Virus record (IMG/VR): IMGVR_UViG_3300024502_000010
Span: 1-64,000 of that record
Direction: 5' to 3' (one strand)
Length of the DNA stretch: 64,000 nucleotides
Position numbers and translations under genes: made by a program
The notes under the pieces: generated by a model
The model's input: the letters and a program-made list of their open reading frames with translations, nothing else
What the model was told of the DNA's origin: nothing
Databases searched by the model: none
Shown: one piece after another, positions 44,096 through 63,118 of the stretch
Numbering within the stretch: position 1 is the first letter of the stretch
Layout: each line of letters opens with the position of its first letter

Positions 44096-44149
44096 TTAGT
44101 GGTTTGTGGTTGTCCTTACACTATAGGTACACTTTAGAGGATCCAAGTT

Positions 44150-44296
44150 TCAGTTACCCAGACGGTCTTCGATATCACTTAAGACGCGCAATATCACCTC
44201 ACGACTATCCTCACCGTTCTCCTCTAACTGTTGCATAACCTCTTGCAGTTGAGGTAGAATATCAGTGGTTATTTGGGCGACTCGTATAATCCTCAT
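44150..44296 (-). CDS. Small hypothetical protein (48 aa, not in track)
   Basis: MRIIRVAQITTDILPQLQEVMQQLEENGEDSREVILRVLSDIEDRLGN; its stop lies 1 nt from repeat copy 1. Confidence 0.5.
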   Translation of the reverse strand: MRIIRVAQITTDILPQLQEVMQQLEENGEDSREVILRVLSDIEDRLGN

Positions 44297-44410
44297 GTCG
44301 CCCAAATGTTTATATTTTAGTGTTCTCATTTTGTTAACATAAAGACCCGATTATTTATGCTTTATGTTAACAAAATAAAAACGCCTTATATGGTATAAAT
44401 TGATACCAAA

Positions 44411-44584
44411 TTACCATCGGTCAGGTGTACTTAGGTCCTCAACATAAGCATCACACTTCTCTGCAGGTTCCAACTTGAATAACTTCTCCCAATCAATCTG
44501 GTGTGGGTCGAAGTCACCGAACACTGATAGATCCAGAGTAATCCTATAACGCTGCTTCTGTGCCTGCTGATATGCAACTGACAT
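44411..44584 (-). CDS. Hypothetical protein (57 aa; start likely 44584, not 44773)
   Basis: MSVAYQQAQKQRYRITLDLSVFGDFDPHQIDWEKLF; GGAG SD and a promoter lie immediately upstream. Confidence 0.65.
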   Translation of the reverse strand: MSVAYQQAQKQRYRITLDLSVFGDFDPHQIDWEKLFKLEPAEKCDAYVEDLSTPDRW

Positions 44585-44611
44585 AAGTTCGCTCCTGTGT
44601 GTTATGAAACT

Positions 44612-44640
44612 ACTATAAGATGCTGGGCGGTTTTTGTCAA
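44612..44640 (-). promoter_or_regulatory. Sigma70-like promoter
   Basis: Minus strand TTGACA-17-TATAGT. Confidence 0.7.
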
Positions 44641-44713
44641 TGGTCTGGGGGTATTTATCAGGGGTCGGTGGATTTATGCGGGGGGATTGTGGGGATTTGA
44701 GAACGCGGGGGTA

Positions 44714-44743
44714 TTGACATTTTGGGGGCGAGTGTGATAGAAT
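44714..44743 (+). promoter_or_regulatory. Divergent sigma70-like promoter
   Basis: TTGACA-18-TAGAAT with extended -10 TG, pointing at the TTTTCCACA cluster. Confidence 0.6.
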
Positions 44744-44788
44744 GACCTGTAAGATAACGACCCCCAGAGACATTTAAATGACTATAAG

Positions 44789-44852
44789 TTTTCCACAATT
44801 CTAACAGTTTTTCCACACATTTATTATACTTTTTCCACAACATTGTGGAAAA
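44789..44852. promoter_or_regulatory. Cluster of four DnaA-box-like 9-mers (TTTTCCACA)
   Basis: Direct copies at 44789, 44809 and 44831; inverted copy TGTGGAAAA at 44844; AT-rich context. Confidence 0.6.
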
Positions 44853-44912
44853 CTAATATCATTATTTCAGCACTTAAATATAAATAACGCAAGTACATTT
44901 TTCATCAATTCA

Positions 44913-45926
44913 GTGGCATACATCTACTCAATCACCAACCTTGAGAATAGCAAACTCTATGTGGGAAAGACTACACAACCCAACCCATATGATAGATGGA
45001 AGCAACACCTACAGAACGCAAGAAGTAAGGATAATTTAGCAGAGAACAATTCATCTCACTCTATGCCTATTGTTCGTGCCATATGTAAGTACGGAGCAGA
45101 TAACTTTAAGTTTAGAGTATTGGAAGAATGTAGCGATGATAATGTTAATGAACGTGAAACCTTTTGGATAAACAAACTTGATACTTGTGGTAAGAATGGA
45201 TATAACATTACATTAGGTGGTGATGGTGTAAAGAAACCAAAAAAGTATTGGGCAAATCATCCACATTCCAAAGCAGTGAGTTGTTATACATTAGAAGGTG
45301 AATGGGTTAGAGACTATGAGAGTGTAGGAATTGCTGCTGATAGTTGTGGAAATAAAAAGGGAAAAACTGGGATAATTGCTTGCATTAAAGGTGTGACATT
45401 TCAAGCACTTGGATATAGATGGGCTTGGAAAGGTGAAACACCTAAAGTAATAGAAAAGAGAGTAAATGTTCGTGGTGCTGTATATGGAATCAATCCAACA
45501 TTAGGGCGTAAAAAGATGTGGAAATCAATGGCAGATGCGGCAGAAGAAATACAAGGAAATCGTACAAATAATCACGCTATTCATCACTCACTTAACAGTC
45601 CCGACAATAGCAAATTACAGGTAAAAGGTTGGTATTTCTTTAGATCAAAACCAACAGATTGGACACCAGCAACAAAAACAAATTCAATAGAACACTATAA
45701 AAAAATTGCTGCAATTAGCAACGAAAAAAGAAAGAAACCTGTCTATGGTGTAAGTATTAAAACCAACGAAATCGTAGAATTTGGTAGTATGAGTGAGGCG
45801 TCATTCTTTATCAAAGGTGATGGTAATTATAGTGGCGTTGCTAATATCAAAAACAACATTCAACGTATAAACAATGGGCAAACTTGGTGCAATGCTTATG
45901 GTTATAGATGGTACGAAAAAGCATAA
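44913..45926 (+). mobile_element. Free-standing GIY-YIG homing endonuclease with NUMOD1-like DNA-binding repeats (337 aa)
   Basis: AYIYSITN...KLYVGKT...RWKQH, E.E.FWI and NGYN motifs; repeated V.G/C....G....F.S..EA modules; TATAAATA late promoter at 44879-44886; antisense to its neighbours. Confidence 0.9.
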
Positions 45927-45949
45927 AAAAAGACCCCTGATGTGGGGTC
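45925..45949 (-). terminator. Intrinsic terminator ending the minus-strand early transcript
   Basis: GACCCC-acatca-GGGGTC stem followed by T7 on the minus strand. Confidence 0.75.
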
Positions 45950-45960
45950 ACTGTGTATCA

Positions 45961-46254
45961 TCAATCAAGTGCTAATCTGTACCTTGCATAATCCTCTGCA
46001 TCACTACGTTTGCGGAATCGTGCTTCTTCTCCTTCAAATCGTAAAGGTAAGTATCGGTATTTCTTTCCTTCCTTGGTGATAACGATTCGGGAGAATAGGT
46101 GAAGTGAGTAACTACCTTCTTCAGTATATTCATCCTCTTTCTTTACTATGAAAGGGAGAACTTGTTGATTGTTGAATGACTGTTTGGAGAGTAACATTGG
46201 AAGATTAGTTGTTAATGAGTTCAGCAGGACTTCCGCATGATTTGTAGAACTCAA
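45961..46254 (-). CDS. Early hypothetical protein
   Basis: ORF track; the true start is probably the internal Met of MLLSKQSF. Confidence 0.6.
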   Translation of the reverse strand: MSSTNHAEVLLNSLTTNLPMLLSKQSFNNQQVLPFIVKKEDEYTEEGSYSLHLFSRIVITKEGKKYRYLPLRFEGEEARFRKRSDAEDYARYRLALD

Positions 46255-46510
46255 TCATACGATTTGCTTCATCTAGTGTAGAGAATGTTTGCGTTCTCCA
46301 CTGTTGTTGATACGGTGTAAAGTAGCGAATCGTGAACATTTTGTTTGATTCAGTTAGAGTGAGCATCTTTTGGTAATAGTTGTCTGCTTCTACTTCACAC
46401 TTATGAGATTCAGTTGCATCTTCAATCTCGTATTGTTTCATACTCAGAGAGTGAATCACGTTGTCCAGAAGATTAGTCAGTGCCTCAATCTTTTGTTCGT
46501 TAGTCATCAT
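46205..46510 (-). CDS. Early hypothetical protein, possibly two fused small genes
   Basis: MTNEQKIEALTNLL... then an internal MFTIRYFTPY... preceded by a leader-like CAAACAAA. Confidence 0.55.
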   Translation of the reverse strand: MMTNEQKIEALTNLLDNVIHSLSMKQYEIEDATESHKCEVEADNYYQKMLTLTESNKMFTIRYFTPYQQQWRTQTFSTLDEANRMIEFYKSCGSPAELINN

Positions 46511-46667
46511 TAGTGCGGTTCCTTTTACTCTGTTGGTGGTTTCTCCAAGTCAGGAAATCGTGGAGTGCTTTTTGATATTCTTCTTCCGAGAAGTATGTAC
46601 GGAGACCAATCGTATATGGGAAGGTACGGATTGTGGGTAATGCCTCAATCTTTTGTTCGTTAGTCAT
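46500..46667 (-). CDS. 55-aa hypothetical protein sharing its first nine codons with the next gene (not in track)
   Basis: MTNEQKIEALPTIRTFPYTIGLRTYFSEEEYQKALHDFLTWRNHQQSKRNRTNDD. Confidence 0.5.
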   Translation of the reverse strand: MTNEQKIEALPTIRTFPYTIGLRTYFSEEEYQKALHDFLTWRNHQQSKRNRTNDD

Positions 46668-46984
46668 CAGTTAAGCACCATACCTTCAGTGAAAGGAACT
46701 TTGTTGCCGTTATCAATCACAAACCATTCAAAGTCACGTTGAAAGATACGAGCATCATTTCCATGAACTTTCAGAATAGCATTGAGACGTGATTTGGTGG
46801 TTACAGTTCTATAACCACAGGTGTAAAGTTCAAGGAAGGTATCACCAATCGTTGCAATATGATTGCCGTGAAGATACACATAAGAGGCATCTCTTTCGGG
46901 CGAATAGAGAACTTCAGTGTTGTCATTTTTCCAGTCTTTGCAATCAATGATTGCTTTATTCATTTGGAGTTCAATCTTTCGCAT
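46667..46984 (-). CDS. Conserved early hypothetical protein (105 aa)
   Basis: MRKIE.QMN.AI, VYLHGNHIA and T.TTKSRLNAIL motifs; downstream of repeat copy 2. Confidence 0.75.
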   Translation of the reverse strand: MRKIELQMNKAIIDCKDWKNDNTEVLYSPERDASYVYLHGNHIATIGDTFLELYTCGYRTVTTKSRLNAILKVHGNDARIFQRDFEWFVIDNGNKVPFTEGMVLN

Positions 46985-47037
46985 GGTTGGAAGTTGTGGT
47001 TATACTATAGGTACACTTTAGAGGATCCAAGTTGCAA

Positions 47038-47241
47038 TCAAGCAACGATTGCAGACTCTACATTCACCTCACGGGTTTCCAGTAGAGCATAATCGTAGTT
47101 TGCTTCCAGATGCTTCAGGTAAGCATCTGCAGCGGAGAAGCAATCAAACAAGCGGAGAGATTTGAAGTCTTCACCTTCATAATCCAAACCGCCAATCACA
47201 GCGTAGACTTTAGACATTTGGGACATTTGGGAAGTGCTCAT
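47038..47241 (-). CDS. Early hypothetical protein; single gene between repeat copies 2 and 3
   Basis: KVYAVIGG.DYEGEDF.SLRLFDC. Confidence 0.65.
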   Translation of the reverse strand: MSTSQMSQMSKVYAVIGGLDYEGEDFKSLRLFDCFSAADAYLKHLEANYDYALLETREVNVESAIVA

Positions 47242-47534
47242 ACTATAGGTACACTTTAGAGGATCCAAGTTAGTATCACACTTCAATCAAAGGTCCAGAT
47301 ACATCACAAAACTCACACAAATAATAATCAATACTCACATTGATTTCCTCTGCAAGTTGTGAGAATTGTGCAAATTGTTCTTCGGAAAGAATGTAGAAAT
47401 CAGTCTCAATCATGGGGTGCAATAATGTCAGCAACAGTGTGTAATGTGGTGGCAGTGATGTTACGAACTCCTGGTGATAGGATACTCGCAACGATAAAGA
47501 TTAACAGAATTGTTTTCACTTTCTGTCGTCTCAT

Positions 47535-47765
47535 TCAGTCAAAGCGGGAAGATACATCACGACCAGGATTCTCAAGATGTGCTACACTCTCAGCAACACC
47601 TTCAGCAGTTAATGCAAACTGAACTTTTTTGCCTTCGTGATAGATGTCAAAGACAGATTGCACATAAGGAGTCAAATTGCCTTCAGAATCCCATGCGTTT
47701 CGTGTGTGTGAAGTCTTGACGATTTCGTAGACTTTAGAGGTGAGAGGTGAAGTGTAAGTGCTCAT
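47535..47765 (-). CDS. Early hypothetical protein
   Basis: MSTYTSPLTSKVYEIV...; the only ATG is the one directly after the repeat. Confidence 0.6.
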   Translation of the reverse strand: MSTYTSPLTSKVYEIVKTSHTRNAWDSEGNLTPYVQSVFDIYHEGKKVQFALTAEGVAESVAHLENPGRDVSSRFD

Positions 47766-47810
47766 ACTATAGGTACACTTTAGAGGATCCAAGTTAGTGA
47801 CTCTTACGAA

Positions 47811-47993
47811 TCACAAACCGTTGATATAATCAGCAACTGCTTGCTTATATTCTTCTTCAGTCTCAAAGATGCGACCGTGAATGTTACGCGGATAAGTAGG
47901 GTTCAATTCACCTACTGCAGCAACAGCGTAACAATCTTGGGCATCATATCCCATTTCAATGAGATTTTGAACGTAAGGATTGTAGTGTGTCAT
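47811..47993 (-). CDS. Early hypothetical protein (60 aa)
   Basis: MTHYNPYVQNLIEMGYD...YPRNIHGRIF. Confidence 0.65.
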   Translation of the reverse strand: MTHYNPYVQNLIEMGYDAQDCYAVAAVGELNPTYPRNIHGRIFETEEEYKQAVADYINGL

Positions 47994-48241
47994 TGTGATT
48001 TAGTGGTAAAACAGTGAGTGTGAATCAGTTGCCGAAGAAAGCGTCGAACTCATCAGCAACATAATCAATCAGTTCGTCAGTTGCATCAAGGTCAAAGACA
48101 TTGCAAACGAAATCTACACAATCATTCAAATCTGTGTGATTGTTGCACATGAACTCCAGAAGTGCAGGAGTGATGTCGGTTTGGAAGTCGAAAGAGGTGT
48201 TAGTCATACTATAGGTACACTTTAGAGGATCCAAGTTGCTA

Positions 48242-48832
48242 TCAGAAAAGATTGCGACCGAATGAACCACACAAATAAAATGCCATTCCTTTATCCTTAA
48301 GCGTCACACCTGCGAAACGGAGAGGAACATAGCGACCGTTAGTTTTAGATGCTTTGGTGCGAATCTGCAGCAATCCGTTAGGTCCAGTGATTGTATTCAG
48401 TTCGCTTTCAATATCAAATGCACGGCGAATCTGCTCACAAATGAACTCATAATCCTCACGCAGTTCCTGATAGTGTTCGGGATGAGTTTCCTCATTCAGT
48501 ACAACAGAACCTACATAATCGTTCTCACGGGTGAATCCAACATATACAGTTTGCTTCAGTTTCTGTCCAACCTTACTATCATCAAAAGACACAGAATCTT
48601 CAATGATTTCAGATAGACAATGCTTCAACTGTGTGGCAGCAATAGATTCACCAACTGTAAAAGTCTTAATCTCTCCATCCTCCAAATCTTTGAGGTCAGA
48701 AGAGTTAGGAACTCCAAGGACAATTTCTAACAGTTGCCCGCGAGCACCTTTGTTCTTGCCAGGTTTATCAAATGCACTGAAATCAGTTACATTCAGTTTG
48801 GCAGATACCTGCAAAGTGGTAAGTTTGGACAT
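48242..48832 (-). CDS. MutH/Sau3AI-like PD-(D/E)xK endonuclease (196 aa)
   Basis: NKGARGQLLEIVLGVPNSSDLKDLEDGEIKT resembles the MutH KG..G.LLE..LG.......D.....ELKT core; C-terminal LLQIRTKAS and AFYL motifs; flanked by repeat copies 5 and 6. Confidence 0.7.
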   Translation of the reverse strand: MSKLTTLQVSAKLNVTDFSAFDKPGKNKGARGQLLEIVLGVPNSSDLKDLEDGEIKTFTVGESIAATQLKHCLSEIIEDSVSFDDSKVGQKLKQTVYVGFTRENDYVGSVVLNEETHPEHYQELREDYEFICEQIRRAFDIESELNTITGPNGLLQIRTKASKTNGRYVPLRFAGVTLKDKGMAFYLCGSFGRNLF

Positions 48833-48883
48833 TGTGGAATTGCGGTGATACTATAGGTACACTTTAGAGGATCCAAGTTGCTA

Positions 48884-49138
48884 TCAACTTTCTTGTGTTA
48901 CACTTTCCACCAAATCGTTCACATAATCCTCATCATAGAGTCGTGAAATCTCTTCGATTAACTCTTCTGGAAGTGAGCAAGTTTCGCGGAGATTCTCTTC
49001 AATCGTATCGCTTGCAAATTGTACCAAACTGTCGAGGTCCATACCATCAACAATCGACTCAATGTAGAGTGCAAGCAGTTTATCGTATTGGTCTTGAGTA
49101 AGTGTCATTTTGTTTGTGAAGTTAGGGAGGGAAATCAT
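48884..49138 (-). CDS. Early acidic hypothetical protein
   Basis: Y.ESIVDGMDLDSLVQFA; packed in an operon. Confidence 0.6.
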   Translation of the reverse strand: MISLPNFTNKMTLTQDQYDKLLALYIESIVDGMDLDSLVQFASDTIEENLRETCSLPEELIEEISRLYDEDYVNDLVESVTQES

Positions 49139-49377
49139 TTCAAGATGTGGCGATAATCAATGGATTTGATACACCAACCGTAGGCAGTTGTAATCTCTTC
49201 TACTAAATCTTCTTCATCATCTGCCTCCCAGATTTGACCGATTGTTGCTTGAGTGGCATAATCAAACTCCAAGAATCCATCACATTCTGCATCGTGTTCT
49301 GGAGATTGATTCTCGCCACAATACGGACATTCATCATCAAAATCAAAAGCGATTTCAGTAACTTGGAATTGCATCAT
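49135..49377 (-). CDS. Early hypothetical protein with a CxxC..H..C motif
   Basis: QFQVTEIAFDF, CPYCG and DLVEEIT..YGWCIKSIDYR motifs. Confidence 0.65.
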   Translation of the reverse strand: MMQFQVTEIAFDFDDECPYCGENQSPEHDAECDGFLEFDYATQATIGQIWEADDEEDLVEEITTAYGWCIKSIDYRHILK

Positions 49378-49514
49378 TTGCAGTAGTTAGGGTCAATTTG
49401 GCAGAACTGATCTGCTTGGCGTTCTTGATACTCATTCACCGTCGCATAAGCAGGAATTGCAACTTTAAAACCAAGTGCAATAGTAGCAATCAGGAAAGCA
49501 ATTCGCATTACTAA

Positions 49515-49685: not shown

Positions 49686-49719
49686 ACTATAGGTACACTT
49701 TAGAGGATCCAAGTTAGAA

Positions 49720-49863
49720 TCAACGAAAACTTACATTGACCGCAACAACTTTTGCGTGAGGATTTCGTGCCAGTGCAGTCTCACGGGCATCTTTTGGGTT
49801 GGTTGCTTGCACTTCTTCTTTGAAGACTTTGCCACCAACGTAGAGTTCAACGATGTACTTCAT
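49720..49863 (-). CDS. Small conserved protein (47 aa, not in track)
   Basis: MKYIVELYVGGKVFKEEVQATNPKDARETALARNPHAKVVAVNVSFR. Confidence 0.7.
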   Translation of the reverse strand: MKYIVELYVGGKVFKEEVQATNPKDARETALARNPHAKVVAVNVSFR

Positions 49864-49901
49864 GTGTTTGTTTGTATTTTAGAAAAAATTGAGGATTTCC
49901 C

Positions 49902-49990
49902 TGCAGTGAATGACCTATGACACCGCTGCAGTAGAATTGAAGAAAAAACAGGTTTTTGCTTCAGTGGTGGACTGGGTTCTCAGTGAGACA
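49902..49990. repeat. Duplicated intergenic hairpin element, copy A
   Basis: tgcagtg(a/g)atgacctatgacaccgctgcagtagaattgaagaaaaa is shared with 56087-56176. Confidence 0.85.
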
Positions 49991-50625: not shown

Positions 50626-51078
50626 AATTAAACAGGGGTAACTTCAACAGAGCGGATAAGATTTGTGCGGTCTTGTGCTAGGTAATCATCAGCGATTTTA
50701 CCACAAGATGAACGAGACTTGATGAACCTTTCTTCATAGTAAGTCTCTGCACTGTTGGGGACTTTATACTCAATCAAGAGTCGATAGTTGTTCATAATCA
50801 GTACAGAAGAGAGAAAGAACCACAGAACTTACGAACCCACTGGAGAGTATCATAATGACTGCGAGGATTAGACATTACCATGCTCTTGTTAGTTACAGGA
50901 TTGAGAGCAATAGCAACATATTTGTGGTCACATTCTTGATACTCAGGGGTGATTTGTTGAATGAACATTTGCATCACCTTACCTTCTTTCCAGTTGGTGA
51001 CATAGTGAAAGACTTGATCCATTTCAGTGGTTGTGCTCATACTATAGGTACACTTTAGAGGATCCAAGTAAGAATCAC

Positions 51079-51843: not shown

Positions 51844-52332
51844 ATGCAGGTATTAAAGATGAAAGAACACCCAGAACATAAAGGTTATTTTATCACAGAA
51901 AACGGTGAAGTTTGGTCATACTGGCGCAATCGTGGAAGAGATGGGTGGGGAGTAGTATTGGATAAAGAACCAAAAAAAAGAAGATTTAATAATCATTGCA
52001 AGGGATACTTGACTGTTTGGATTAAAACGGAAGAAGGACAGAAGTTAAAAAAAGTTCATCGTTTGGTCGCAGAAACTTACATTCCAAATCCAAATAATCT
52101 CCCTCAAGTTAATCACATTGATGGCGTAAAAACAAACAACAATGTCAGTAATCTTGAGTGGTGCAGTAATCAAAAAAACACGGAGTTGGCATTAGCAAAA
52201 GTTCATCGGTTAGTAACACCAACTGGAGAAATAGTAGAAGTTTTTAATCTTGGAAAGTTTTGTAGAGAACATAAAATTGATAGGGGAGACCTTTATAAAG
52301 GGAAAAAGTCCAAAGGTTACTATTTGCAATAA
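51844..52332 (+). mobile_element. Free-standing HNH homing endonuclease (NUMOD4-like N-terminus plus HNH)
   Basis: Y.ITENGEVWS, GYLTV, VHRLVAETYIPNPNNLPQVNHIDGVKTNNNVSNLEWCS motifs; TATAAATA late promoter at 51826-51833; antisense to neighbours. Confidence 0.92.
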
Positions 52333-52764: not shown

Positions 52765-52792
52765 ACTATAGGTACACTTTCGAGGATCCAAG

Positions 52793-53710
52793 TTACCAAC
52801 TCTTTGCGATTGTGAAGTTGGCATGAGAGAATACCTCACGATCAACTACTTTGTAAGACCCAAACTTGTTATGAATGACATAACCCTCGTGGAAACCTGC
52901 AACATCCCAGAGGAAACATTCAATGTCATCCTCTTCATGAATGAACAGGAACAAATCATCCTTGATAGACTTCACCAACTTCCACAATCTGATGAGGTTG
53001 ATGTCACAATCGCATTTTTCTGCAATTTCATCCTCACGGATGGTGCGTTGCTCTCGGATGCAAGCGTTAATCTCTTTTTTGATTTGTGATGCTTTCTTGT
53101 CGCTCACAAACTCACACAGAGTGCTCATTTGTTTAGCAAAGTTACACACATCCTCCAAATCTTCACGATAAGGATTCAGCGACACAGCAGGTTGCACAAA
53201 CAAACATTTCTTTGTGCTTGCAAACTTGCTAGTGATAGGATGTGCTACCATTTCAGGCAGACGCTCACCAGTGTAGTAAGTATGTGGAGCAACGATAATC
53301 TCTTGACGCACAACTTCAGGAAAACGATAGGTAATCGTGTTGGGCGTGAATGTATCCAACCCTTTACCGAAACCAATCCAATCTCCCTGATACACATTGT
53401 TAGTGCGAGGAAGATAATCCAGACAGAAGATGAGGATTTGTGCTACCCTTGGTTGTCCACCAAAATGAGTAAAGATGTCATCTTCGTTATAGCAAAGGCG
53501 AATCTTTTGCTTGTTAAATGCTGCTTTGGTGCAGACAAAAAACTTACCATTCTCAGGATTAGTGCCCCAAACAATAGCAGGAGCACCATCCATCTTGACG
53601 CTGATAAAACTATCAACCTCAGAGAACCAATCAAGAACAGATAGATTACCCGTCAGGATTTCATCTTCAGGGTGCTCAAGGTGCTTATTTTGCATTGGTT
53701 GCTTACTCAT
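52793..53710 (-). CDS. Conserved protein with a KxDG ligase-type motif (possible nucleotidyltransferase)
   Basis: NKHLEHPED, SVKMDGAPAIVWG..P..GKFFV.TK and HEGYV...K.VDR..FS..NF motifs; exactly fills the interval between repeat copies 9 and 10. Confidence 0.6.
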   Translation of the reverse strand: MSKQPMQNKHLEHPEDEILTGNLSVLDWFSEVDSFISVKMDGAPAIVWGTNPENGKFFVCTKAAFNKQKIRLCYNEDDIFTHFGGQPRVAQILIFCLDYLPRTNNVYQGDWIGFGKGLDTFTPNTITYRFPEVVRQEIIVAPHTYYTGERLPEMVAHPITSKFASTKKCLFVQPAVSLNPYREDLEDVCNFAKQMSTLCEFVSDKKASQIKKEINACIREQRTIREDEIAEKCDCDINLIRLWKLVKSIKDDLFLFIHEEDDIECFLWDVAGFHEGYVIHNKFGSYKVVDREVFSHANFTIAKSW

Positions 53711-54263: not shown

Positions 54264-54310
54264 AGGGTAAATGCGTCTTACACTATAGGTACACTTTAGA
54301 GGATCCAAGT

Positions 54311-54492: not shown

Positions 54493-55356
54493 TTACATAA
54501 ACTTGGTAAGACCAACAGTTTCACTAACTCTCTTTTCAATCAATTTACCATACTCCTCGTGAAGTTCGCATCCAACATAATTCCTTCCCAAAGATTTGGC
54601 AACAGCAGCAGTAGTCCCACTACCCATAAATGGGTCAAGAATAGTGTCACCTTCACGAGAACCAGCAATAATACAAGGTTCAATAAGTTCTGGAGGATAA
54701 ACTGCAAAGTGAGAACCTTTGTATGGTTTAGTTGTTACTTCCCATACACTACGTTTCCGTTTTAATTCCTTGCCATCTACAGTGGGTTCTTTAATCGAAT
54801 CAACATCAAAATAATAGTTCTTGCTCTTAGATAAGAGGAAGATATATTCGTGAGATTTGGTACATCGATCTTTCATACTTTCGGGCATTGGATTTGGTTT
54901 GCTCCAAATAATATCCTGTCGTAGATACCAACCATCTGCACGCAAAGCAAATGCTAGCATCCAAGGAATACCAATCAAATCTTTATCCTTTAGACCCTCA
55001 AGTTTATTTCCTCTTCTAGGATTTCGTATTTGTGGCAAATCTTGGTTGTTAGATGCCACAGATTGCTTAGGTAGTGTCTGACCTTTACCAGAACGATAGT
55101 TGTAATAAGAATCACCAATGTTAACCCACAATGTGCCATCATCTGTAAGAACATCACGCACACCGCGAAACACCTCTACCAGTTGGGAGATAAACTCTTC
55201 AGGCGACTCTTCTAAACCAATTTGATTATCTTCGTTACCGTAATCACGCAGACCGTAGTATGGTGGAGAGGTCACACACATTTGTGCTTTTACACCAGCG
55301 TCTACAAAATGTTTAAGAGTTGAGCGGCAGTCACCATAAAGAATAACATCCTTCAT
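54493..55356 (-). CDS. DNA methyltransferase, N4-C/N6-A beta class (287 aa)
   Basis: VTSPPY catalytic motif near the N-terminus; HFAVYPPEL and ILDPFMGSGTT SAM-binding motif near the C-terminus. Confidence 0.92.
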   Translation of the reverse strand: MKDVILYGDCRSTLKHFVDAGVKAQMCVTSPPYYGLRDYGNEDNQIGLEESPEEFISQLVEVFRGVRDVLTDDGTLWVNIGDSYYNYRSGKGQTLPKQSVASNNQDLPQIRNPRRGNKLEGLKDKDLIGIPWMLAFALRADGWYLRQDIIWSKPNPMPESMKDRCTKSHEYIFLLSKSKNYYFDVDSIKEPTVDGKELKRKRSVWEVTTKPYKGSHFAVYPPELIEPCIIAGSREGDTILDPFMGSGTTAAVAKSLGRNYVGCELHEEYGKLIEKRVSETVGLTKFM

Positions 55357-56048
55357 TCAAGAACCTCTTTTACAAACAATTTATCCATATTTGAGTGATT
55401 TATACGAAAGCAAGTGCCACGATTGCGAACACCCTTACCAGTGCCAACATTATACTGGGTTCTCAGTCGTAAGTCAATAGAAATTACATCATCTTCGATT
55501 GCCTTACGAAACAGATTTTTATCAATAGAAATGTAGACATACGCTTCATTGTAGTGAAAATACTCTATACCATTACGAACTTCAACATCGGCAAATACTT
55601 TAACACAAGATGGAAATTTGTGAGCAAACTGTTTAATAAGTGAATCCCAATCCCACCTAACAATCTCCAGTTCTTCGTGCTTTATGGAAACATATTCATC
55701 ATCAGTATGAATCCAAAATCCTCTGTTGTTTTTGGTTCTTGTCACAGTAGATTGTCCAGACAATTCCCCAATGTGTTTTGTGTGAGGAAATCCAAAAGTT
55801 TCTAGGAACTTTAATTGAGGTATCTGCCATTCACCTTCCTTTGTAAAGAGAGTTTGTTTTCCACCAGCACCTTTCCTTGCTGCTTTCAACTCTTTTCCAT
55901 CAATATCTGGACCAGAGATACAATTCTCAGTCAAACCAAGTTCTTGTTCAAAAGTATGACCAACTCCAGTATCACCTTTGCGATGAGACTTTATGAAACC
56001 TTTTGCTTTAATTCGGTTGTAAGCAGGAACGAACTCAACGAAATCCAT
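55353..56048 (-). CDS. MvaI/BcnI-family restriction endonuclease-like protein (231 aa)
   Basis: RKGDTGVGHTFEQELGLTEN..SGPDI.G.ELKA, TLFTKE and RNRGTCFRI motifs; ATGA overlap with the methyltransferase. Confidence 0.8.
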   Translation of the reverse strand: MDFVEFVPAYNRIKAKGFIKSHRKGDTGVGHTFEQELGLTENCISGPDIDGKELKAARKGAGGKQTLFTKEGEWQIPQLKFLETFGFPHTKHIGELSGQSTVTRTKNNRGFWIHTDDEYVSIKHEELEIVRWDWDSLIKQFAHKFPSCVKVFADVEVRNGIEYFHYNEAYVYISIDKNLFRKAIEDDVISIDLRLRTQYNVGTGKGVRNRGTCFRINHSNMDKLFVKEVLE

Positions 56049-56086
56049 GGTAAAATCTATACTTTAGTAAAAATCAGGAATTTGGT

Positions 56087-56176
56087 TGCAGTGGATGACC
56101 TATGACACCGCTGCAGTAGAATTGAAGAAAAATCAGGTTTTGACCCCTGACTGTGACTGGGTTCTTAGGCGAGACT
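56087..56176. repeat. Duplicated intergenic hairpin element, copy B
   Basis: See copy A at 49902. Confidence 0.85.
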
Positions 56177-57609: not shown

Positions 57610-57668
57610 AATGTTGTTTCGTTTGAGTGCTTATACTATAGGGACACTTTAGAGGATCCAAGTAAGTA

Positions 57669-58277: not shown

Positions 58278-58304
58278 TGTTATCTAAACACTACTTTTTA
58301 GTAT

Positions 58305-58505
58305 TTAGAACTCTACTTCCTTTGCTTTATATGAACCCTTGAATACTCGTCCTTCAGTATAGAATTGCTTTACACGTTCGCGGCGAGTAGCAAGAAGCAA
58401 ATCATATTCTTCTTGTTGCTGCTTAGTAAAGATAAAATCTTGACGACGCCAAGCATCTTTCAGTTCTTGAATGTGAGGGAGCACGTTGGGGATGTGTTCA
58501 GTCAT
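58305..58505 (-). CDS. Hypothetical protein (66 aa)
   Basis: VLPHIQELKDAWRRQDF.FTKQQQEEYDLLL..RRERV. Confidence 0.65.
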   Translation of the reverse strand: MTEHIPNVLPHIQELKDAWRRQDFIFTKQQQEEYDLLLATRRERVKQFYTEGRVFKGSYKAKEVEF

Positions 58506-58752
58506 TTGAGAATAATAAAGGAAAAGTGTTCTGTGTGGGTGATTTGGTGGACAGTTTAGAAACTGTCAGTAATCATAGTTGGAGTTAAGATACTCATTAA
58601 GATTGAAGTCGTTAGATTCTTCAATGAGTTCAGTTAGATCTTTTTCAATAAAATCAAATCCATTAGATTCTTCAATTTGAATGTCATCGAAGCAGTCCAT
58701 AATTTGTTTCATGCTTACATTATAGGTACACTTTAGAGGATCCAAGTAAAAA

Positions 58753-59001
58753 TCAATCAATTTTTTTAACAGATTTTGCTAACTTTTTCAGTCTCTTTGT
58801 TACTTCTTTTCCGCCACTACGCTTTACAATTAACTTATTAACTTCTTTCTTTGTTGGTTTCCCTTCTGGACCTTCATATCTTTGAAGAGTATAAGTTTGC
58901 ACACCAGTATCACTCCTCTTGTAAGTTCCAGGAACTGCTTGAGGTGGAGTGTCTGGTCTTTTTGCTTCGCAGATTTCGTAGAACTCTCTAAATGTTAGCA
59001 T
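58753..59001 (-). CDS. Basic protein with a CTS-like N-terminus (82 aa)
   Basis: MLTFREFYEICEAK; co-transcribed with 59003..59647. Confidence 0.55.
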   Translation of the reverse strand: MLTFREFYEICEAKRPDTPPQAVPGTYKRSDTGVQTYTLQRYEGPEGKPTKKEVNKLIVKRSGGKEVTKRLKKLAKSVKKID

Positions 59002-59002
59002 T

Positions 59003-59647
59003 TTATCCTAATTCTCCCATTGCTTTTTGCTTACGAAGTTTCTTAGGATTCTTCGTCTTATCTGCAGAGTAGTTATTATCATCCTCATTATCAGGATCTA
59101 CAGCACTACGATGTCTCGTGCGTCTTTCTTCATCATCCATATTTGCACGACTTCTCTTTGCTTCATCTGGAGAATATCTTCTACCACTGTTATACCATTC
59201 CTTACCTACATGACCTCTCTTCTCAGCATCAGCAGAAGCAGATCTCCTCTTATTCTTCTGACGATTTGCCTTGAAGTCCTTCATAGTCATTCCTTCAGCA
59301 ATCATAATACTCTCTCTCCACTCTTCACTCATATTCCCCATAATTGCCGTTGCTGCTTGTTCAGTATCAGCATATCCTTCATCAAGAAGGTGCGAAAGAA
59401 TGATGTCGTATAGGTCATAATCCTCAACATATTGTGAACGATATTTGCCACCTGTTTTTTTATGAGTATCTTCAAGTTCTGCTGCTCTTGCGTCAGCATA
59501 CTTTCTACTCTTTACTGGTTTACCAATCTTCTTCTCTTTCTTTCCATCAGGAGAACCCATTACTTGATATGGCATCTCATCAAGTTGCTGGTTTTCAACA
59601 ACTTCCATATATGCTTCTTGAAGATTGCGAATGTCTTGAGCGTCCAT
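59003..59647 (-). CDS. Charged late protein with the DLYDIILSHLLDEGYA domain (214 aa)
   Basis: MDAQDIRNLQEAYMEV...LDE; ATAAATA late promoter at 59668-59674. Confidence 0.65.
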   Translation of the reverse strand: MDAQDIRNLQEAYMEVVENQQLDEMPYQVMGSPDGKKEKKIGKPVKSRKYADARAAELEDTHKKTGGKYRSQYVEDYDLYDIILSHLLDEGYADTEQAATAIMGNMSEEWRESIMIAEGMTMKDFKANRQKNKRRSASADAEKRGHVGKEWYNSGRRYSPDEAKRSRANMDDEERRTRHRSAVDPDNEDDNNYSADKTKNPKKLRKQKAMGELG

Positions 59648-59905
59648 CTTATGAATAACTTTTTAGTTATTTATTGTTACTCAAACTCAAGGGGTTTATT
59701 TGCAACTCTCATAGGTGGAGTTTGATATTCTGGCATACTAGAAGTTTCAACAAATACTTCTATCTTAGTCTCATCATTCCAATGTCGAATTGCATTAGCG
59801 ATAATGAAGCAGTTGGTAATAAAAATGCTCAAAAACATCAAAAGGCGGATAAGTGCTACCTTATCCGCTTCTTTATCACATTTACTTGCTTTTTCTCCAA
59901 GTGCC

Positions 59906-60169
59906 TTAGCAAGCAATCGCCAGACAGTTCTGTTCTTCTTCATATCTTGATTTTCTTGATTTAACATACTTTAAATGTTTCCAATCTTCTTTATAACAAA
60001 CAACAAGCAATCTTTCATTTGCGTGAATGGGGCAGGCGTGATAGTTTACTTGGTCTTTAGGACGAACAACATACTCAATCGTAACATATTCGTCATCCCT
60101 AAAATAAACCCAACCTTCAACACCTTTTGTCCATTCAACATAATCATTGACTTGTGGTTTGTATGTCAT
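59906..60169 (-). CDS. Conserved hypothetical protein (87 aa)
   Basis: Y.PQVNDYV.W...VEGWVYF.DDEY.TIE motif. Confidence 0.65.
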   Translation of the reverse strand: MTYKPQVNDYVEWTKGVEGWVYFRDDEYVTIEYVVRPKDQVNYHACPIHANERLLVVCYKEDWKHLKYVKSRKSRYEEEQNCLAIAC

Positions 60170-60603
60170 ACAAAGAACGCATCCAATGGAGACTGCTTGA
60201 TAGGCATTGCTGAATAGTTTCGCGTGTCGTTGATATTTACACGAGCACCAACTGTCTTACTATTGATTGGGGCAAAGTATTCTCTGGTCTTGGATTTGTA
60301 GAATCCCCAGATTGTCCTTGTGGGAGCACCATTATTGTAATCAAACTTACGATTGCAATACAACCATATAGCAATAACTCCACGCTTGAACTCTTCGAAC
60401 TCATAATAATAATTTTCGGGTGCTTTATGCGGAAACTCAGCAATCATAGAACTTGTCACGCGACATATACTCAATTTGTTTCTGCAGTTGTGAGATTTCG
60501 TGTTCTTGTTCTGCAATTTTACTTTGCAGTTGTTCAATACGTTCTTGGTACTGTTTCTTCAAATCAAACACCATTTTATTGGTGTGAGTAACGTGGTGAG
60601 TCA

Positions 60604-60846
60604 TCAGGTTGTAAAAGATTCAACTACTGCAGATTCTACATCCTCAGCAAGCGCATAAGTCCTCGCGCTTAACACATTTTCACGAAGAGTAGTATAGTGT
60701 TGCTCATAAAAATTGTCAGAATCTTCTGCAGAAATCAAATCAAAACATTCATTGTCGTTTTCCGCAATCACATTCCAAAGTCCACCGTATTCACTGGACG
60801 GAAAAGGAATGTAGTGGTCAACGATGTAAAGAAACTTTTGTGCCAT
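60604..60846 (-). CDS. Conserved hypothetical protein (80 aa)
   Basis: LYIVDHYIPFPSSEYGGLWNVIA. Confidence 0.7.
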   Translation of the reverse strand: MAQKFLYIVDHYIPFPSSEYGGLWNVIAENDNECFDLISAEDSDNFYEQHYTTLRENVLSARTYALAEDVESAVVESFTT

Positions 60847-61381
60847 TTGTCTTTGTAAATTACCTCTTAAGTTTAAGATTAGTTGTCGTTATTGTCAATG
60901 TCGGAAGCAACTATAAAAGAAACTCCTACAGTCAAAAGAATACCGATTCCCATACCAAGAATAAAAGTCATTAGTAAAACTCAGCGAGATAGTAGTCAAC
61001 AGTTACCTCAAGTTTCGCTGCTTCACGCTCAACTTCTTTCCAGAACTCTTCTGCTACTTTGTCCATTTCTGCTTGTTTAATAAGGTCACGGAGTCGTTTG
61101 GGGATCATTTGGATTTCTCCTTAAGTTTTGCTTCTTCGCGTGAATACATTACCTTTAAGTAATATAGCATAATGGAGGATACAAATGCAACCAGTGCTGC
61201 GTAGATTGCTACACCGAGTACAATACTCATCTGATTTCTATAGAGGGTGGTTTCTTGAGATTCTCTATTGCCTTAGAGCGATAGTAAGCATCATACATTT
61301 TGTCATCACGCTGGATTAGAAAGACATTCCAACCAAGAATAACTGCAAAACCAATCAATCCAACAACAATGTACTTTTTGT

Positions 61382-61789
61382 TCATTTGCTCATTTGAAGA
61401 GTAGGAACAGGCATACCACCTTCGGTGGGAACATAGATGGTCACATTACCTTTGTTAGATCCTTCTTCAAGACCAGTAATGTAAAGATACTGAAGATACT
61501 CACGGTTGTCCTTCAGACTATCACCAATGATTTGGTTTGCCTTAGCAACACCAGTAGCACGGATGATTTCAGCATCAGCAAGTTGTTGAGCACTATCTTT
61601 CTTTGCTTGTGCTTCAAGAACTGCTACCTGACGAGTGTATTCTGCTTTTTGCAACTCTGCTTTACCAGCAAGAGATTGCTGCCACACATTATATTGTGGA
61701 CCACCAATAAAGATGAGACCACCAATCACAACCACACCGACAGCAATAGCAGCAACAGCAGGGTCAATAAATCCGTTTTGTTGTTTCAT
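61382..61789 (-). CDS. Membrane-anchored coiled-coil protein, SPFH/prohibitin C-terminus-like (135 aa)
   Basis: N-terminal hydrophobic helix, A/E/K-rich heptads (IRATGVAKANQIIGDSL) and YL.YLY.....IYVPTE. Confidence 0.65.
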   Translation of the reverse strand: MKQQNGFIDPAVAAIAVGVVVIGGLIFIGGPQYNVWQQSLAGKAELQKAEYTRQVAVLEAQAKKDSAQQLADAEIIRATGVAKANQIIGDSLKDNREYLQYLYITGLEEGSNKGNVTIYVPTEGGMPVPTLQMSK

Positions 61790-61806
61790 AATAATTTACC
61801 TAAGAA

Positions 61807-62220
61807 TTAAACAGCAAGCGCAGCAGAGGGGATTTCAATCACTTCAGGAAGTTTTTGTTCATAACAATTCATATTGTAGCACACCCATTCACCGTTGCGG
61901 AAGACATAGGCATACTCTTCACCATTAGCAGGCAGAAGATACTCACACAAATCAGCATCAAGACGAGGAGGACAATCATCGTTACGATAAGAATAATAGT
62001 TGGGTCCATAAACACCCTTCACTGCACTATCATTCCAGCGGTCATCAGTCCAGCAGCAAGACATATCACCACCATCAATCAAGTCAGCAACTTTCTGACG
62101 AGTGTTGTAATGAGTGTTCAGGATACGACCCAACCATTCAGGATAACCATCCCAGTGGTGATACACAGAGAGAATAGAACCATTCTTAAGTTCAAGACCG
62201 ATTCGTGCTCGGGTGGACAT
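61807..62220 (-). CDS. Conserved early hypothetical protein
   Basis: MSTRARIG...SVYHHWDGYPEWLG..L..HY motif. Confidence 0.75.
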   Translation of the reverse strand: MSTRARIGLELKNGSILSVYHHWDGYPEWLGRILNTHYNTRQKVADLIDGGDMSCCWTDDRWNDSAVKGVYGPNYYSYRNDDCPPRLDADLCEYLLPANGEEYAYVFRNGEWVCYNMNCYEQKLPEVIEIPSAALAV

Positions 62221-62266
62221 TTCAAGTTTGTTGCTTACATTATAGGTACACTTTAGAGGATCCAAG

Positions 62267-63118
62267 TTAGTAAACTGCTATGAGTTCACTTGCTTTTTTC
62301 CTACTGCCGCCTTTTGCAGCAATCGTTCTAGTTACTTGAATTTGATAGATTGTAGCATTTTTGTAGAGTTCTCTTGTAATAGGAACATCGTGATTTGATA
62401 CAATCACTTTGATACCTTTAGATGAAAGAGATTCTGCAAGTTGTGCTAACTGAACTTGTTGGTCAGAAGTAAATCCATCAGTCGCATAACTTGTGAAATT
62501 TGCAGTATTTGATGCAGGAACATACGGTGGGTCAAAGTAGACAACATCACCTGCTTCCAAATCCTCATACAGAGATGAATCTTCAAAAGAAAGTGATGTG
62601 AACCTCACCAATTGTTTGGATAAGAAATACATCCTGAAGTTCATCATTTCCTCTCTGGGAAAGTAAGCACTTTGTATTTCTTTCTCCCCAGTATCCTTAT
62701 TTACAACTTCTCTACCATAAGGAACATTAAACATTCCTTTGCTATTATATCTTGATAGTCCATTAAAACAGTGCTTATTCAAATAAATGAATAACCTTGC
62801 TCTCTCTGTAGTATCTGTTGCTTGATTGAAGTGCTCTCGCAACTCCAAATATACTTCTCTTGTATTATTCTCTGGCGTGAATAGTTCTTCGCAGTATTGA
62901 ATGAAACTATCATCATTTGGATTTACCAAATTCTGATAGATTGCTACCAAATCCTTATTCACATCGTTGAGGATATATTGCTGTGCTGGTGTATTCAAAG
63001 CAACAGCAAGACTACCACCAAAGGGTTCACAATAACGCTTTGGATAACCAATATGGGGAATAAGATGGGGCAGAACTCTTGTTTTATTGCCAGCCCATTT
63101 AAGAAAAGTTTTGTTCAT
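62267..63118 (-). CDS. dam: Dam-like DNA adenine methyltransferase (283 aa)
   Basis: FLKWAG.K, EPFGGS, FNGL.RYN..G.FNVPYG and YFDPPY motifs closely follow the E. coli/T4 Dam family. Confidence 0.9.
   Translation of the reverse strand: MNKTFLKWAGNKTRVLPHLIPHIGYPKRYCEPFGGSLAVALNTPAQQYILNDVNKDLVAIYQNLVNPNDDSFIQYCEELFTPENNTREVYLELREHFNQATDTTERARLFIYLNKHCFNGLSRYNSKGMFNVPYGREVVNKDTGEKEIQSAYFPREEMMNFRMYFLSKQLVRFTSLSFEDSSLYEDLEAGDVVYFDPPYVPASNTANFTSYATDGFTSDQQVQLAQLAESLSSKGIKVIVSNHDVPITRELYKNATIYQIQVTRTIAAKGGSRKKASELIAVY

What the first reader, a model, noticed from the sequence alone, without database searches (positions are those of the whole stretch)
44121..62267. Fourteen near-identical 28-bp elements partition the early region into gene cassettes
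Seen: 14 co-oriented copies with at most one mismatch, none noticed in the structural 43 kb. Each lies within about 0-20 nt of the upstream stop, and nine have TGAT exactly 4 nt before ACTTGG. Each ends in TATA(G/A)T just before the next gene. Several intervals hold exactly one gene (47038, the MutH-like gene, the KxDG gene). There is no canonical -35 at 17 bp; instead there is an ACTT-N10-AAGT dyad and GGATCC. Established: repeated early-promoter stem-loop cassettes (PeSLs) mediate modular shuffling in some T4-type phages. Inference: a cyanophage system where one element is both a factor-dependent promoter and a recombination boundary for gene gain, loss and amplification.
Basis: partly seen in the sequence, partly recalled or inferred. 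Interest (0 to 1): 0.85.

Follow-up and report, generated by a model that had tools for sequence, protein, structure and literature searches.

The report
Repeated early-promoter cassette element in a cyanophage
Fourteen almost identical 29-base signals sit between the small early genes of a T4-like cyanophage; they are most likely its early promoters, belong to a widespread two-part promoter family in such phages, and sometimes act as cut-and-paste points for whole gene cassettes.

Summary
There are 14 co-oriented copies with 0-1 mismatch, all on the minus strand between 44.1 and 62.3 kb, and none elsewhere in the window. The matching 205-kb contig also holds exactly 14.

The window is a T4-like cyanomyovirus. 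The copies lie in the small-gene region upstream of the gp25/gp6/gp7 baseplate genes.

The element belongs to a large family. It occurs in isolates S-SM2 and SynMITS9220M01 and in at least 120 metagenomic viral stretches. The family shares an invariant core, CTAAAG(T/C)GTNCCTATAGT followed by RTRAGCA. Upstream of the core sits an 11-nt 'specifier' that is uniform within a genome and different between lineages.

GGATCC and the ACTT/AAGT dyad belong to this lineage's specifier only. There is no stem-loop and no -35 hexamer, so this is not a PeSL in the strict sense.

The best reading is a -35-less, probably factor-assisted early promoter. Its copies are also substrates for homologous recombination. 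Clean cassette gains or losses with breakpoints inside the element exist, but about three quarters of indel breakpoints lie elsewhere.

One conflict is unresolved. In 39% of family copies the start codon directly abuts TATAGT, which a normal -10 geometry would leave out of the transcript. No transcription start data exist.

The parts
62239..62267 (-). Copy E1 (TATAAT variant). It overlaps the stop of the D12 (Dam-like) methylase gene and heads a cassette of about 12 small genes (62220 to 58753).
58719..58747 (-). Copy E2 (TATAAT variant). It heads 3 genes (58712 to 57669).
57635..57663 (-). Copy E3 (C at position 21). It heads the helicase, the MvaI/BcnI-like nuclease, the N4/N6 methylase and a 59-aa gene.
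54282..54310 (-). Copy E4. It heads two small genes. This cassette is absent in L162 and replaced in L171 and in contig A.
53711..53739 (-). Copy E5 (G at position 13). An ATG abuts TATAGT and a second in-frame ATG lies at +15. It heads the single DUF6267 gene.
52765..52793 (-). Copy E6 (G at position 13). It overlaps the stop of the DUF6267 gene. An ATG abuts TATAGT and a second ATG lies at +15. It heads the DUF7717 gene and three small genes.
51041..51069 (-). Copy E7. An ATG abuts TATAGT and a second ATG lies at +18. It heads six small genes.
49686..49714 (-). Copy E8. The abutting ATG is the only possible start: the S-CAM7 homologue aligns from residue 4. It heads four small genes. The cassette is replaced in L160.
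48850..48878 (-). Copy E9. It heads the single MutH-like 196-aa gene. Element plus gene are absent in L172, with the breakpoint inside the element.
48208..48236 (-). Copy E10. The abutting ATG is the only nearby start. It heads two small genes.
47766..47794 (-). Copy E11. The abutting ATG is the only possible start: S-CBWM1 and S-TIM5 homologues align from residue 3-4. It heads three small genes.
47242..47270 (-). Copy E12. An ATG abuts TATAGT and in-frame ATGs lie at +15 and +24. It heads a single 67-aa gene.
47004..47032 (-). Copy E13. It heads four small genes that end at a terminator-like hairpin (45949-45932).
44120..44148 (-). Copy E14, the last copy. It heads small genes that run towards the baseplate module.

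Best explanation
Each copy is an early-class promoter of a T4-like cyanophage, and the array drives minus-strand transcription of cassettes of 1-12 small genes. The element is this lineage's version of a two-part promoter family found in many cyanomyoviruses. Read 5' to 3', a copy has an A/T-rich stretch that usually holds the upstream gene's stop codon. Next comes an 11-nt genome-specific 'specifier' (here ACTTGGATCCT) that occupies the place of a -35 hexamer. Then follow an invariant core CTAAAG(T/C)GT-N-CC, a -10-like TATAGT, and RTRAGC-A. Host RNA polymerase most likely uses TATAGT as the -10 and starts about 7 nt downstream at the conserved A, giving 9-14-nt leaders. The core, and probably a factor that reads the specifier, would replace the -35 contact. 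Because the copies are 40-45-bp near-identical direct repeats in a recombination-proficient phage, they are also passive substrates for homologous recombination. That recombination keeps them uniform within a genome and now and then deletes, inserts or swaps a whole cassette.

Shown here: the anatomy, the family, the conservation, and cassette indels with breakpoints in the element. Inferred: promoter activity, early timing, the start site and the factor.
For: Genome context: the window encodes gp6, a gp7-like 4026-aa protein, gp8, gp13, gp14 and gp15.

Position: all 14 copies share the orientation of the genes, lie in gene junctions, and are confined to the small-gene region upstream of the baseplate module. 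The complete S-SM2 genome shows the same layout, with 12 copies, all on the plus strand, all between 42.7 and 58.5 kb. SynMITS9220M01 carries at least 12 copies in the same region.

The logo of 164 unique copies shows an invariant core, RTRAGCA downstream, an A/T-rich stretch upstream and no -35.

-10 hexamer: TATAGT is kept in every near-intact copy. The alternative hexamer TAAAGY has C at its last position in most S-SM2 copies.

Local comparison: the S-PM2 orthologue of gene 61807-62220 has an ordinary promoter whose -10 lies 19 nt from the ATG; copy E1 has its -10 at 18 nt.

Selection: orthologous copies are 90.6% identical, against 58-67% for their coding flanks.

Specifier: mean 0.75 mismatches per 11 nt within a locus, against 6.2 between loci.

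Recombination: L172, L162 and L170 show cassette indels whose alignments overlap by 41, 29 and 46 nt, about the repeat length. L160, L171 and contig A show cassette replacements bounded by copies on both sides. Neighbouring copies share private variants: E1 and E2 both have TATAAT, E5 and E6 both have G13.

Wider pattern: canonical TTGACA-type promoters occur elsewhere in the region (63152-63125 and 44640-44612). This fits the reported cyanophage pattern of a novel early element plus host-like middle promoters (Doron et al. 2016, ISME J 10:1437). I recalled that from the abstract; the paper was not held.
Against: No transcription start or expression data exist for this phage or for any relative that carries the element.

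In 62 of 160 unique family copies, and 7 of 14 here, the triplet right after TATAGT is ATG, and 59 of those 62 open an ORF of at least 40 codons. In 23 copies it is the only possible start. Homologues confirm those N-termini. A start site 7 nt after TATAGT would leave that AUG out of the promoter's own transcript. Such genes could then be translated only from read-through transcripts.

Start codons sit either at 0 or at 14 nt and beyond after TATAGT, with almost none between. That pattern looks like a choice between leaderless and leadered translation, and so hints at a 5' end near the end of TATAGT.

The conserved 'spacer' and the absent -35 have no precedent in ordinary sigma-70 promoters.

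Recombination at the element is not the main route of gene flux: only 31 of 114 breakpoints are near a copy.
Confidence: 0.55

Rival explanations
1. The element is a promoter, but transcription starts inside it, at or next to the G of TATAG. In this reading TATAGT is a melting and start region rather than a sigma-70 -10. Genes whose ATG abuts TATAGT would then be made from nearly leaderless mRNAs with a 0-2-nt leader, and the others from 17-22-nt leaders. Recognition would need something other than standard sigma-70 contacts, for example a phage-delivered or phage-modified specificity factor that reads the specifier plus the core.
For: The start-codon distance is bimodal: 0 nt in 62 copies, 14 nt or more in the rest, and almost nothing from 1 to 13.
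ATG at position 0 is in frame in 36 of 37 copies that also have a downstream start. Copies with a non-ATG triplet there are in frame in 22 of 48.
GTG at that position is strongly depleted: 5 observed against about 30 expected from the column frequencies.
The first copy of the S-SM2 array is fused to its ATG and follows a late structural gene, while the SynMITS9220M01 orthologue starts 15 nt further downstream.
The long, contiguous, near-invariant recognition sequence with a lineage-specific part resembles promoters of phage-specific polymerases. By eye the core also resembles the SP6 promoter around CTATAG.
Against: The complete S-SM2 genome is annotated with gp55 and gp33 only and has no RNA polymerase.
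No hexamer upstream fits a -10 for such a start site; TAAAGY has C at its last position in S-SM2.
The sequence constraint RTR allows ATG only at position 0. Selection on read-through transcripts can therefore explain part of the start-codon pattern.
TATAGT keeps the invariant A2 and T6 typical of a -10.
Confidence: 0.25
2. The element acts mainly at the RNA level within long early transcripts. It would be a conserved translation-initiation or processing site placed between cistrons. The core and specifier would be read by an RNA-binding protein, a nuclease or a small RNA, and the start codon would sit at 0 or at about +18.
For: The element always lies between a stop and a start codon, and the start codon is often part of it.
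The triplet after TATAGT is clearly visible to ribosomes, as the frame bias shows.
Degenerate copies in S-SM2 keep the specifier and AAAG(T/C)GT while TATAGT decays.
Against: There is no conserved secondary structure and no Rfam match.
The A/T-rich upstream stretch, the TATAGT hexamer and a purine at +7 form a promoter-like layout.
An 18-kb region would otherwise depend on the single canonical promoter seen upstream of the array, at 63152.
Syntenic regions of Syn9 and S-CAM7 carry repeated elements with clear -10 boxes.
Confidence: 0.1
3. The element is a dedicated site for a site-specific recombinase, an integron-like cassette system, and any promoter activity is secondary.
For: Cassette indels occur with breakpoints inside the element.
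The specifier is genome-specific, as recombinase sites often are.
Against: No integrase or recombinase gene was found in the region. The only mobile-type genes are a GIY-YIG and an HNH endonuclease on the opposite strand.
The element has no dyad symmetry or spacer architecture typical of recombinase sites.
Most indel breakpoints lie elsewhere.
Near-identical strain-level contigs show no cassette variation.
Confidence: 0.04

Closest known systems
PeSLs (promoter-early stem-loops) of T4-type phages RB49/phi1, T4/PST and KVP40/nt-1 (Arbiol et al. 2010, PMC2839356; Comeau et al. 2014, PMC4122927)
   Same: Both are repeated, conserved, co-oriented regulatory elements between small genes of hyperplastic regions in T4-like phages. 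In both, recombination between copies removes or adds element-plus-gene cassettes.
   Different: PeSLs combine a terminator-like stem-loop with a sigma-70 promoter (-35, N17, -10) and a Shine-Dalgarno site. This element has no stem-loop, no -35 and no Shine-Dalgarno. It has an invariant 'spacer' core, a genome-specific 11-nt module and often a fused start codon. Mini-circles have not been tested.
Early-gene regulatory element of T4-like cyanophages Syn9 and P-TIM40 (Doron et al. 2016, ISME J 10:1437; recalled from the abstract, paper not held)
   Same: Both are non-host-like repeated elements upstream of small genes in the syntenic region before the baseplate genes, while host-like promoters occur elsewhere. 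The recognising factor is unknown in both.
   Different: The repeated element I find in the Syn9 early region is a GGTGGCACA box about 29 nt upstream of TATTCTATAAGAGTC. S-CAM7 has AACTGGCACA, a stem-loop and TGCTACAAT. Neither contains the CTAAAGTGT..CTATAGT core: Syn9 has no match with up to 4 mismatches in the 72 kb examined. I could not check whether the published motif covers the family described here.
T4 early promoters
   Same: Both are many strong, unusually uniform promoters with an A/T-rich upstream stretch, used at time zero by unmodified or virion-modified host polymerase.
   Different: T4 early promoters keep good -35 and -10 hexamers. Here the -35 position holds lineage-specific sequence.
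T4 middle promoters (MotA box with AsiA, 'sigma appropriation') and promoters of phage-specific polymerases (T7, T3, SP6)
   Same: In these systems a specific sequence replaces the -35 contact, or a long contiguous recognition sequence has a part that co-varies with the phage lineage.
   Different: These cyanophages are reported to lack motA and asiA (PMC5780444). No phage RNA polymerase is annotated in S-SM2. The resemblance is one of logic only.

Membership tests
PeSL (promoter-early stem-loop) | Stem-loop / terminator-like hairpin directly upstream of the promoter | tested here: not met
   Three of four copies with flanks fold no better than shuffles (z -0.06 to +0.62). The one low-energy fold (z -2.5) uses copy-specific flanks. 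No terminator-like site adjoins any copy.
PeSL (promoter-early stem-loop) | Sigma-70-type promoter with -35 and -10 hexamers 17 bp apart | tested here: not met
   The -10-like TATAGT is present. The hexamer 17 bp upstream is ACTTGG (0 of 6 matches to TTGACA). None of the 14 copies is called by the consensus scan. The family logo shows no -35.
PeSL (promoter-early stem-loop) | Clustered in hyperplastic regions between small variable ORFs | tested here: met
   All 14 copies lie in the 18-kb small-gene region. Gene content varies strongly among relatives.
PeSL (promoter-early stem-loop) | Indels between relatives with crossover inside the element | tested here: met
   L172, L162 and L170 show such indels; the L172 junction was inspected base by base. 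These are a minority of all indels: 31 of 114 breakpoints lie near a copy.
PeSL (promoter-early stem-loop) | Excised mini-circles during infection | not testable with these tools
   This needs inverse PCR or long reads from infected cultures.
Bacterial sigma-70 (group 1) promoter | -10 hexamer with A at position 2 and T at position 6, and a purine start about 7 nt downstream | tested here: met
   TATAGT or TATAAT is present in all 14 copies. Column +7 is A in 111 and G in 29 of 164 family copies.
Bacterial sigma-70 (group 1) promoter | The start codon of the served gene lies downstream of the start site | tested here: inconclusive
   Met in 7 of 14 copies. In the other 7 an ATG abuts TATAGT, and in 3 of these it is the only nearby start.
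Promoter of a phage-encoded single-subunit RNA polymerase (T7-like) | A cognate polymerase gene in the genome | tested here: not met
   No RNA polymerase is annotated in the complete S-SM2 genome, which carries the same family. None was seen among the large ORFs of the window. This rests on annotation; no exhaustive profile search was made.
Cyanomyovirus CTAAAGYGT..CTATAGT element family (defined here) | Invariant core plus RTRAGCA, co-oriented with the genes, in the region upstream of gp25/gp6, with a genome-uniform specifier | tested here: met
Integron-like site-specific cassette system | Recombinase gene and structured recombination sites | tested here: not met
   No recombinase domain was found in the region, and the element has no conserved structure.

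The most novel reading that the evidence does not exclude
The family is a two-part promoter read by a so far unknown, lineage-specific factor that is delivered with the DNA or made first. The factor would recognise the 11-nt specifier in place of a -35 contact and co-evolve with it. Initiation would occur at the end of TATAGT, so that about 40% of early genes are expressed from leaderless mRNAs. That would be a new mode of host-polymerase capture, or a new polymerase specificity, in the most abundant group of marine phages. It would also act as a built-in barrier or passport for moving early-gene cassettes between phage lineages.
Probability: 0.15. Interest if true: 0.85.

Novelty: new variant of a known kind. 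Interest (0 to 1): 0.58.

Why it matters
T4-like cyanophages are among the most abundant viruses in the sea, and how they start their infection programme is unsettled. They are reported to lack the T4 MotA/AsiA system. As I recall the one study that mapped transcript starts, their early genes use a non-host-like element whose reader is unknown.

This finding supplies a sharply defined, very widespread element with a clear anatomy: an invariant core, a genome-specific module at the -35 position, and frequent fusion to the start codon. Two cultured phages, S-SM2 and SynMITS9220M01, carry it. That makes the question 'who reads the early promoter, and where does transcription start?' directly testable.

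It also gives concrete examples in cyanophages of promoter copies acting as crossover points for whole gene cassettes. One such cassette carries a MutH-like nuclease. At the same time the data show that most gene turnover in this region does not need the element.

Tried and rejected
(1) TAAAGT (positions 13-18) as the real -10, which would put the start site before the fused ATG. Rejected because most S-SM2 copies have C at the last hexamer position and the first position varies among relatives.

(2) TTGATA or TTGGAT as -35 hexamers. Both give only 15-bp spacers, and neither is conserved in the family.

(3) A stem-loop or PeSL architecture. No stable or shared fold was found.

(4) A phage single-subunit RNA polymerase. 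None is annotated in S-SM2.

(5) A known RNA family or tRNA in the region. None was found.

(6) A GATC or Dam-methylation link through GGATCC. GATC is not depleted: 145 sites observed against about 212 expected, and 34 of them in the region. GGATCC is also absent from sister lineages.

(7) Amplification. No paralogous proteins occur within the region.

(8) An apparent 9.6-kb deletion junction in L178. This was an artefact of my own summary line; the contig is collinear with the window.

(9) Text search of the literature for the motif letters returned only unrelated primer sequences. The papers most likely to describe cyanophage early motifs were not held.

(10) DNA-binding domains among 47 small ORFs. 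None was recognised.

(11) Megablast of the region against isolated phages gave only short 80-86% patches, so no close cultured relative of this lineage exists in that collection.

Full report
OBSERVATION. A search with the 29-mer ACTTGGATCCTCTAAAGTGTACCTATAGT, allowing 3 mismatches, returns exactly 14 sites. All are on the minus strand. Nine are perfect and five have one mismatch; none is expected by chance (repeat family D9). A scan allowing up to 7 mismatches finds nothing else in the 64 kb. The public contig identical to the window, 204,829 bp long, also has 14 exact hits. The array is therefore confined to one 18-kb region of a roughly 200-kb genome.

- Nine copies have TGAT 4 nt upstream.
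- Every copy lies 0-17 nt after a stop codon.
- Every copy ends in TATAGT or TATAAT.

Conservation continues downstream as RTRAGCA. In 7 of the 14 copies the triplet after TATAGT is ATG.

CONTEXT. The large minus-strand ORFs are T4-type baseplate and neck proteins: gp6, a 4026-aa gp7-like wedge protein, gp8, gp13, gp14 and gp15. Short patches of 80-86% DNA identity are to Synechococcus and Prochlorococcus myoviruses. The window is therefore a T4-like cyanomyovirus.

The array lies in the small-gene region that runs, in the same direction, into the baseplate module. The same layout is seen in Syn9, S-SM2 and SynMITS9220M01. Besides about 47 small ORFs of unknown function, the cassettes carry:
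- a helicase,
- an MvaI/BcnI-like nuclease with an N4/N6 methylase,
- DUF6267 and DUF7717 proteins,
- a weak MutH relative.

A D12 (Dam-like) methylase gene ends at the first copy.

THE ELEMENT IS ONE VERSION OF A LARGE FAMILY. Exact scans of viral contigs found divergent relatives (66-81% DNA identity) that carry the same 29-mer. Among cultured phages, SynMITS9220M01 has at least 12 copies and S-SM2 has 12. In the complete S-SM2 genome all 12 are on the gene strand between 42.7 and 58.5 kb.

The logo of 164 unique copies shows:
- an invariant core from CC-T-CTAAAG(T/C)GT to CTATAGT,
- RTRAGCA downstream, with a purine at +7 in 85% of copies,
- an A/T-rich stretch upstream,
- no -35 hexamer.

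The 11 nt just upstream of the core differ completely between lineages. Examples are ACTTGGATCCT here, GTTACTCACCT in SynMITS9220M01, AGGGGGGTCGC in S-SM2, and GTTAGTAACCT, CACTGAGGCCT and GAGCCGGCCCT in other contigs. Within a genome they are nearly uniform: 0.75 mismatches within a locus against 6.2 between loci. I call this part the specifier.

Several contig lineages with only 58-67% identity in the flanks keep the same specifier, and their orthologous copies are 90.6% identical. The specifier is therefore under selection and is not merely homogenised.

WHAT IT IS NOT. Three of four copies fold no better than shuffled sequence, and the fourth pairs only through its own flanks. No terminator-like site adjoins a copy, and none of the 14 passes a sigma-70 consensus scan. 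PeSLs are defined as a stem-loop plus a sigma-70 promoter plus a Shine-Dalgarno site. Two defining features fail, so this is not a PeSL in the strict sense, although it behaves like one in part. No Rfam family and no tRNA matches.

PROMOTER MODEL AND ITS PROBLEM. Several features fit a promoter without a -35:
- TATAGT keeps the A2 and T6 typical of a -10 hexamer in all lineages.
- A conserved A lies 7 nt downstream.
- An A/T-rich stretch lies where a proximal UP element would be.
- The specifier then occupies about -36 to -25 and the core about -24 to -13.
- The S-PM2 orthologue of the first cassette gene has an ordinary promoter whose -10 lies at the same distance from its ATG.

Canonical TTGACA-type promoters exist at 63152-63125 and 44640-44612. 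From memory of its abstract, Doron et al. 2016 reported that Syn9 and P-TIM40 use a novel element for early genes and host-like promoters for middle genes. The paper was not available. My own reading of Syn9 and S-CAM7 shows repeated but different elements in the syntenic region.

The problem is start-codon geometry. Over 160 unique family copies, the triplet after TATAGT is ATG in 62, and 59 of these open ORFs of at least 40 codons. Otherwise the start lies 14 nt or more downstream, most often 15-20, with almost nothing between 1 and 13.

Among copies that have a downstream start at 12-24 nt, ATG at position 0 is in frame in 36 of 37 cases. Copies with another triplet there are in frame in 22 of 48. 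In 23 copies the fused ATG is the only start. Homologues in S-CAM7, S-CBWM1 and S-TIM5 and orthologues in relatives confirm those N-termini.

A start site at +7 would omit this AUG, so such genes would depend on read-through from upstream copies. No terminator-like site adjoins any copy, although a few lie inside cassettes (54010-53981, 59868-59845 and 45949-45932), so read-through is possible.

Alternatively, transcription starts at the end of TATAGT and these mRNAs are nearly leaderless. That would explain the bimodal spacing. It needs recognition other than a sigma-70 -10, because TAAAGY fails as a -10 in S-SM2 and no phage polymerase is annotated there. I rate the +7 model about 0.55 and the internal-start model about 0.25.

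RECOMBINATION. A metagenome scan added 50 loci. Chaining their alignments to the window gave 57 distinct indels or replacements. Of 114 breakpoints, 31 lie within 20 nt of a copy. That is five times the share of bases near a copy but close to the share of gene junctions that carry one, about a quarter. Alignment ends are also biased towards conserved elements.

Clean element-mediated events do exist:
- L172 has the upstream flank of E9, one element, and the downstream flank of E10. It lacks exactly one element plus the MutH-like gene, and the two alignments overlap by the 41 nt shared by both copies.
- L162 lacks the cassette between E4 and E5 (overlap 29 nt).
- L170 has about 2.5 kb extra between two copies at the E1 site.
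- L160, L171 and contig A have replaced cassettes bounded by copies on both sides.

Neighbouring copies share private variants. By contrast, the restriction-modification pair, the 214-aa gene and many small genes come and go inside cassettes without any copy at the junction. Strain-level contigs at 99.7-100% identity show no cassette variation, and there are no paralogues in the region. The copies therefore act as occasional crossover sites, as expected for 40-45-bp repeats in a T4-like phage. They are not the main engine of gene flux, and no amplification is seen.

VERDICT. It is not a PeSL, its palindrome and dyad are incidental, and it is a member of a widespread family. It is best filed as a new variant of phage early-promoter cassettes. 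Its notable features are the invariant core, the genome-specific specifier and the fused start codons. All functional statements await 5'-end mapping, which is feasible in two cultured phages.

Noticed in passing
window 49875-49956 and 56060-56141: A second conserved non-coding element of about 85-120 nt occurs in two copies (87% identical) in intergenic gaps. One copy lies between the helicase and the restriction nuclease gene. Homologues at 72-84% identity occur in many related contigs but not in contig A or L012. On the gene strand it contains terminator-like and PstI-site hairpins. One variant contig (L013) diverges from the window right next to it.
   Followed up: partly
window 54493-56048 (minus strand): The phage carries a type II restriction-modification pair: an N6_N4 methylase (E 4e-57) and an MvaI/BcnI-family nuclease (E 7e-39). 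The pair is absent from contig A, L146, L162 and L184, and is replaced by a 177-aa ORF in L012. The site CCSGG is absent from 44.0-62.4 kb, although 26 copies occur in the rest of the window.
   Followed up: partly
window 48242-48832 and 62267-63118 (minus strand): A distant MutH-like nuclease (below the family cut-off) and a D12 (Dam-like) adenine methylase lie in the same region, and every early element of this lineage contains GATC within GGATCC. A functional link is possible but untested. GATC is not depleted overall.
   Followed up: partly
window 44913-45926 (+) and 51844-52332 (+): Two opposite-strand endonuclease genes sit inside the array: a GIY-YIG homing-type gene, and an ORF that is probably the HNH_3 hit. 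Both are missing from the nearest relatives (L021 and contig A), as expected for mobile insertions.
   Followed up: partly
window 63158-63125 (minus strand): A G-rich hairpin with a T-run overlaps a near-consensus TTGACA-16-TATACT promoter just upstream of the Dam-like methylase gene. This true PeSL-like arrangement lies next to the array. A second consensus promoter lies at 44640-44612.
   Followed up: no
L026 (S-CAM7 58-61 kb); L029/L030 (Syn9 43-52 kb): Other cultured cyanomyoviruses have their own repeated intergenic elements in the syntenic region. S-CAM7 has AACTGGCACA, a GC stem-loop, TGCTACAAT and a conserved leader before nearly every small gene. Syn9 has GGTGGCACA about 29 nt upstream of TATTCTATAAGAGTC.
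   Followed up: partly
L013 positions 1-4567 (contig IMGVR_UViG_3300024507_000369): This contig is 99.7% identical to the window down to 50001. It then continues with diverged second copies (58-93% protein identity) of genes from cassettes E6 and E8, in another order and without any element. It is either a recombinant phage or an assembly chimera.
   Followed up: partly
window 7040-12307 (minus strand): A 1755-aa ORF is built largely of 9-nt-periodic collagen-like repeats (families D1, D2, D4 and D5). A second set of 78/126-nt repeats lies at 1-1900 and 3100-3500, probably in fibre genes.
   Followed up: no
family-wide, specifier region: Several lineage-specific specifiers contain 6-bp palindromes directly before the core: GGATCC, GCCGGC and AGGCCT. 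Others are G-runs. The enrichment is marginal and unexplained.
   Followed up: no
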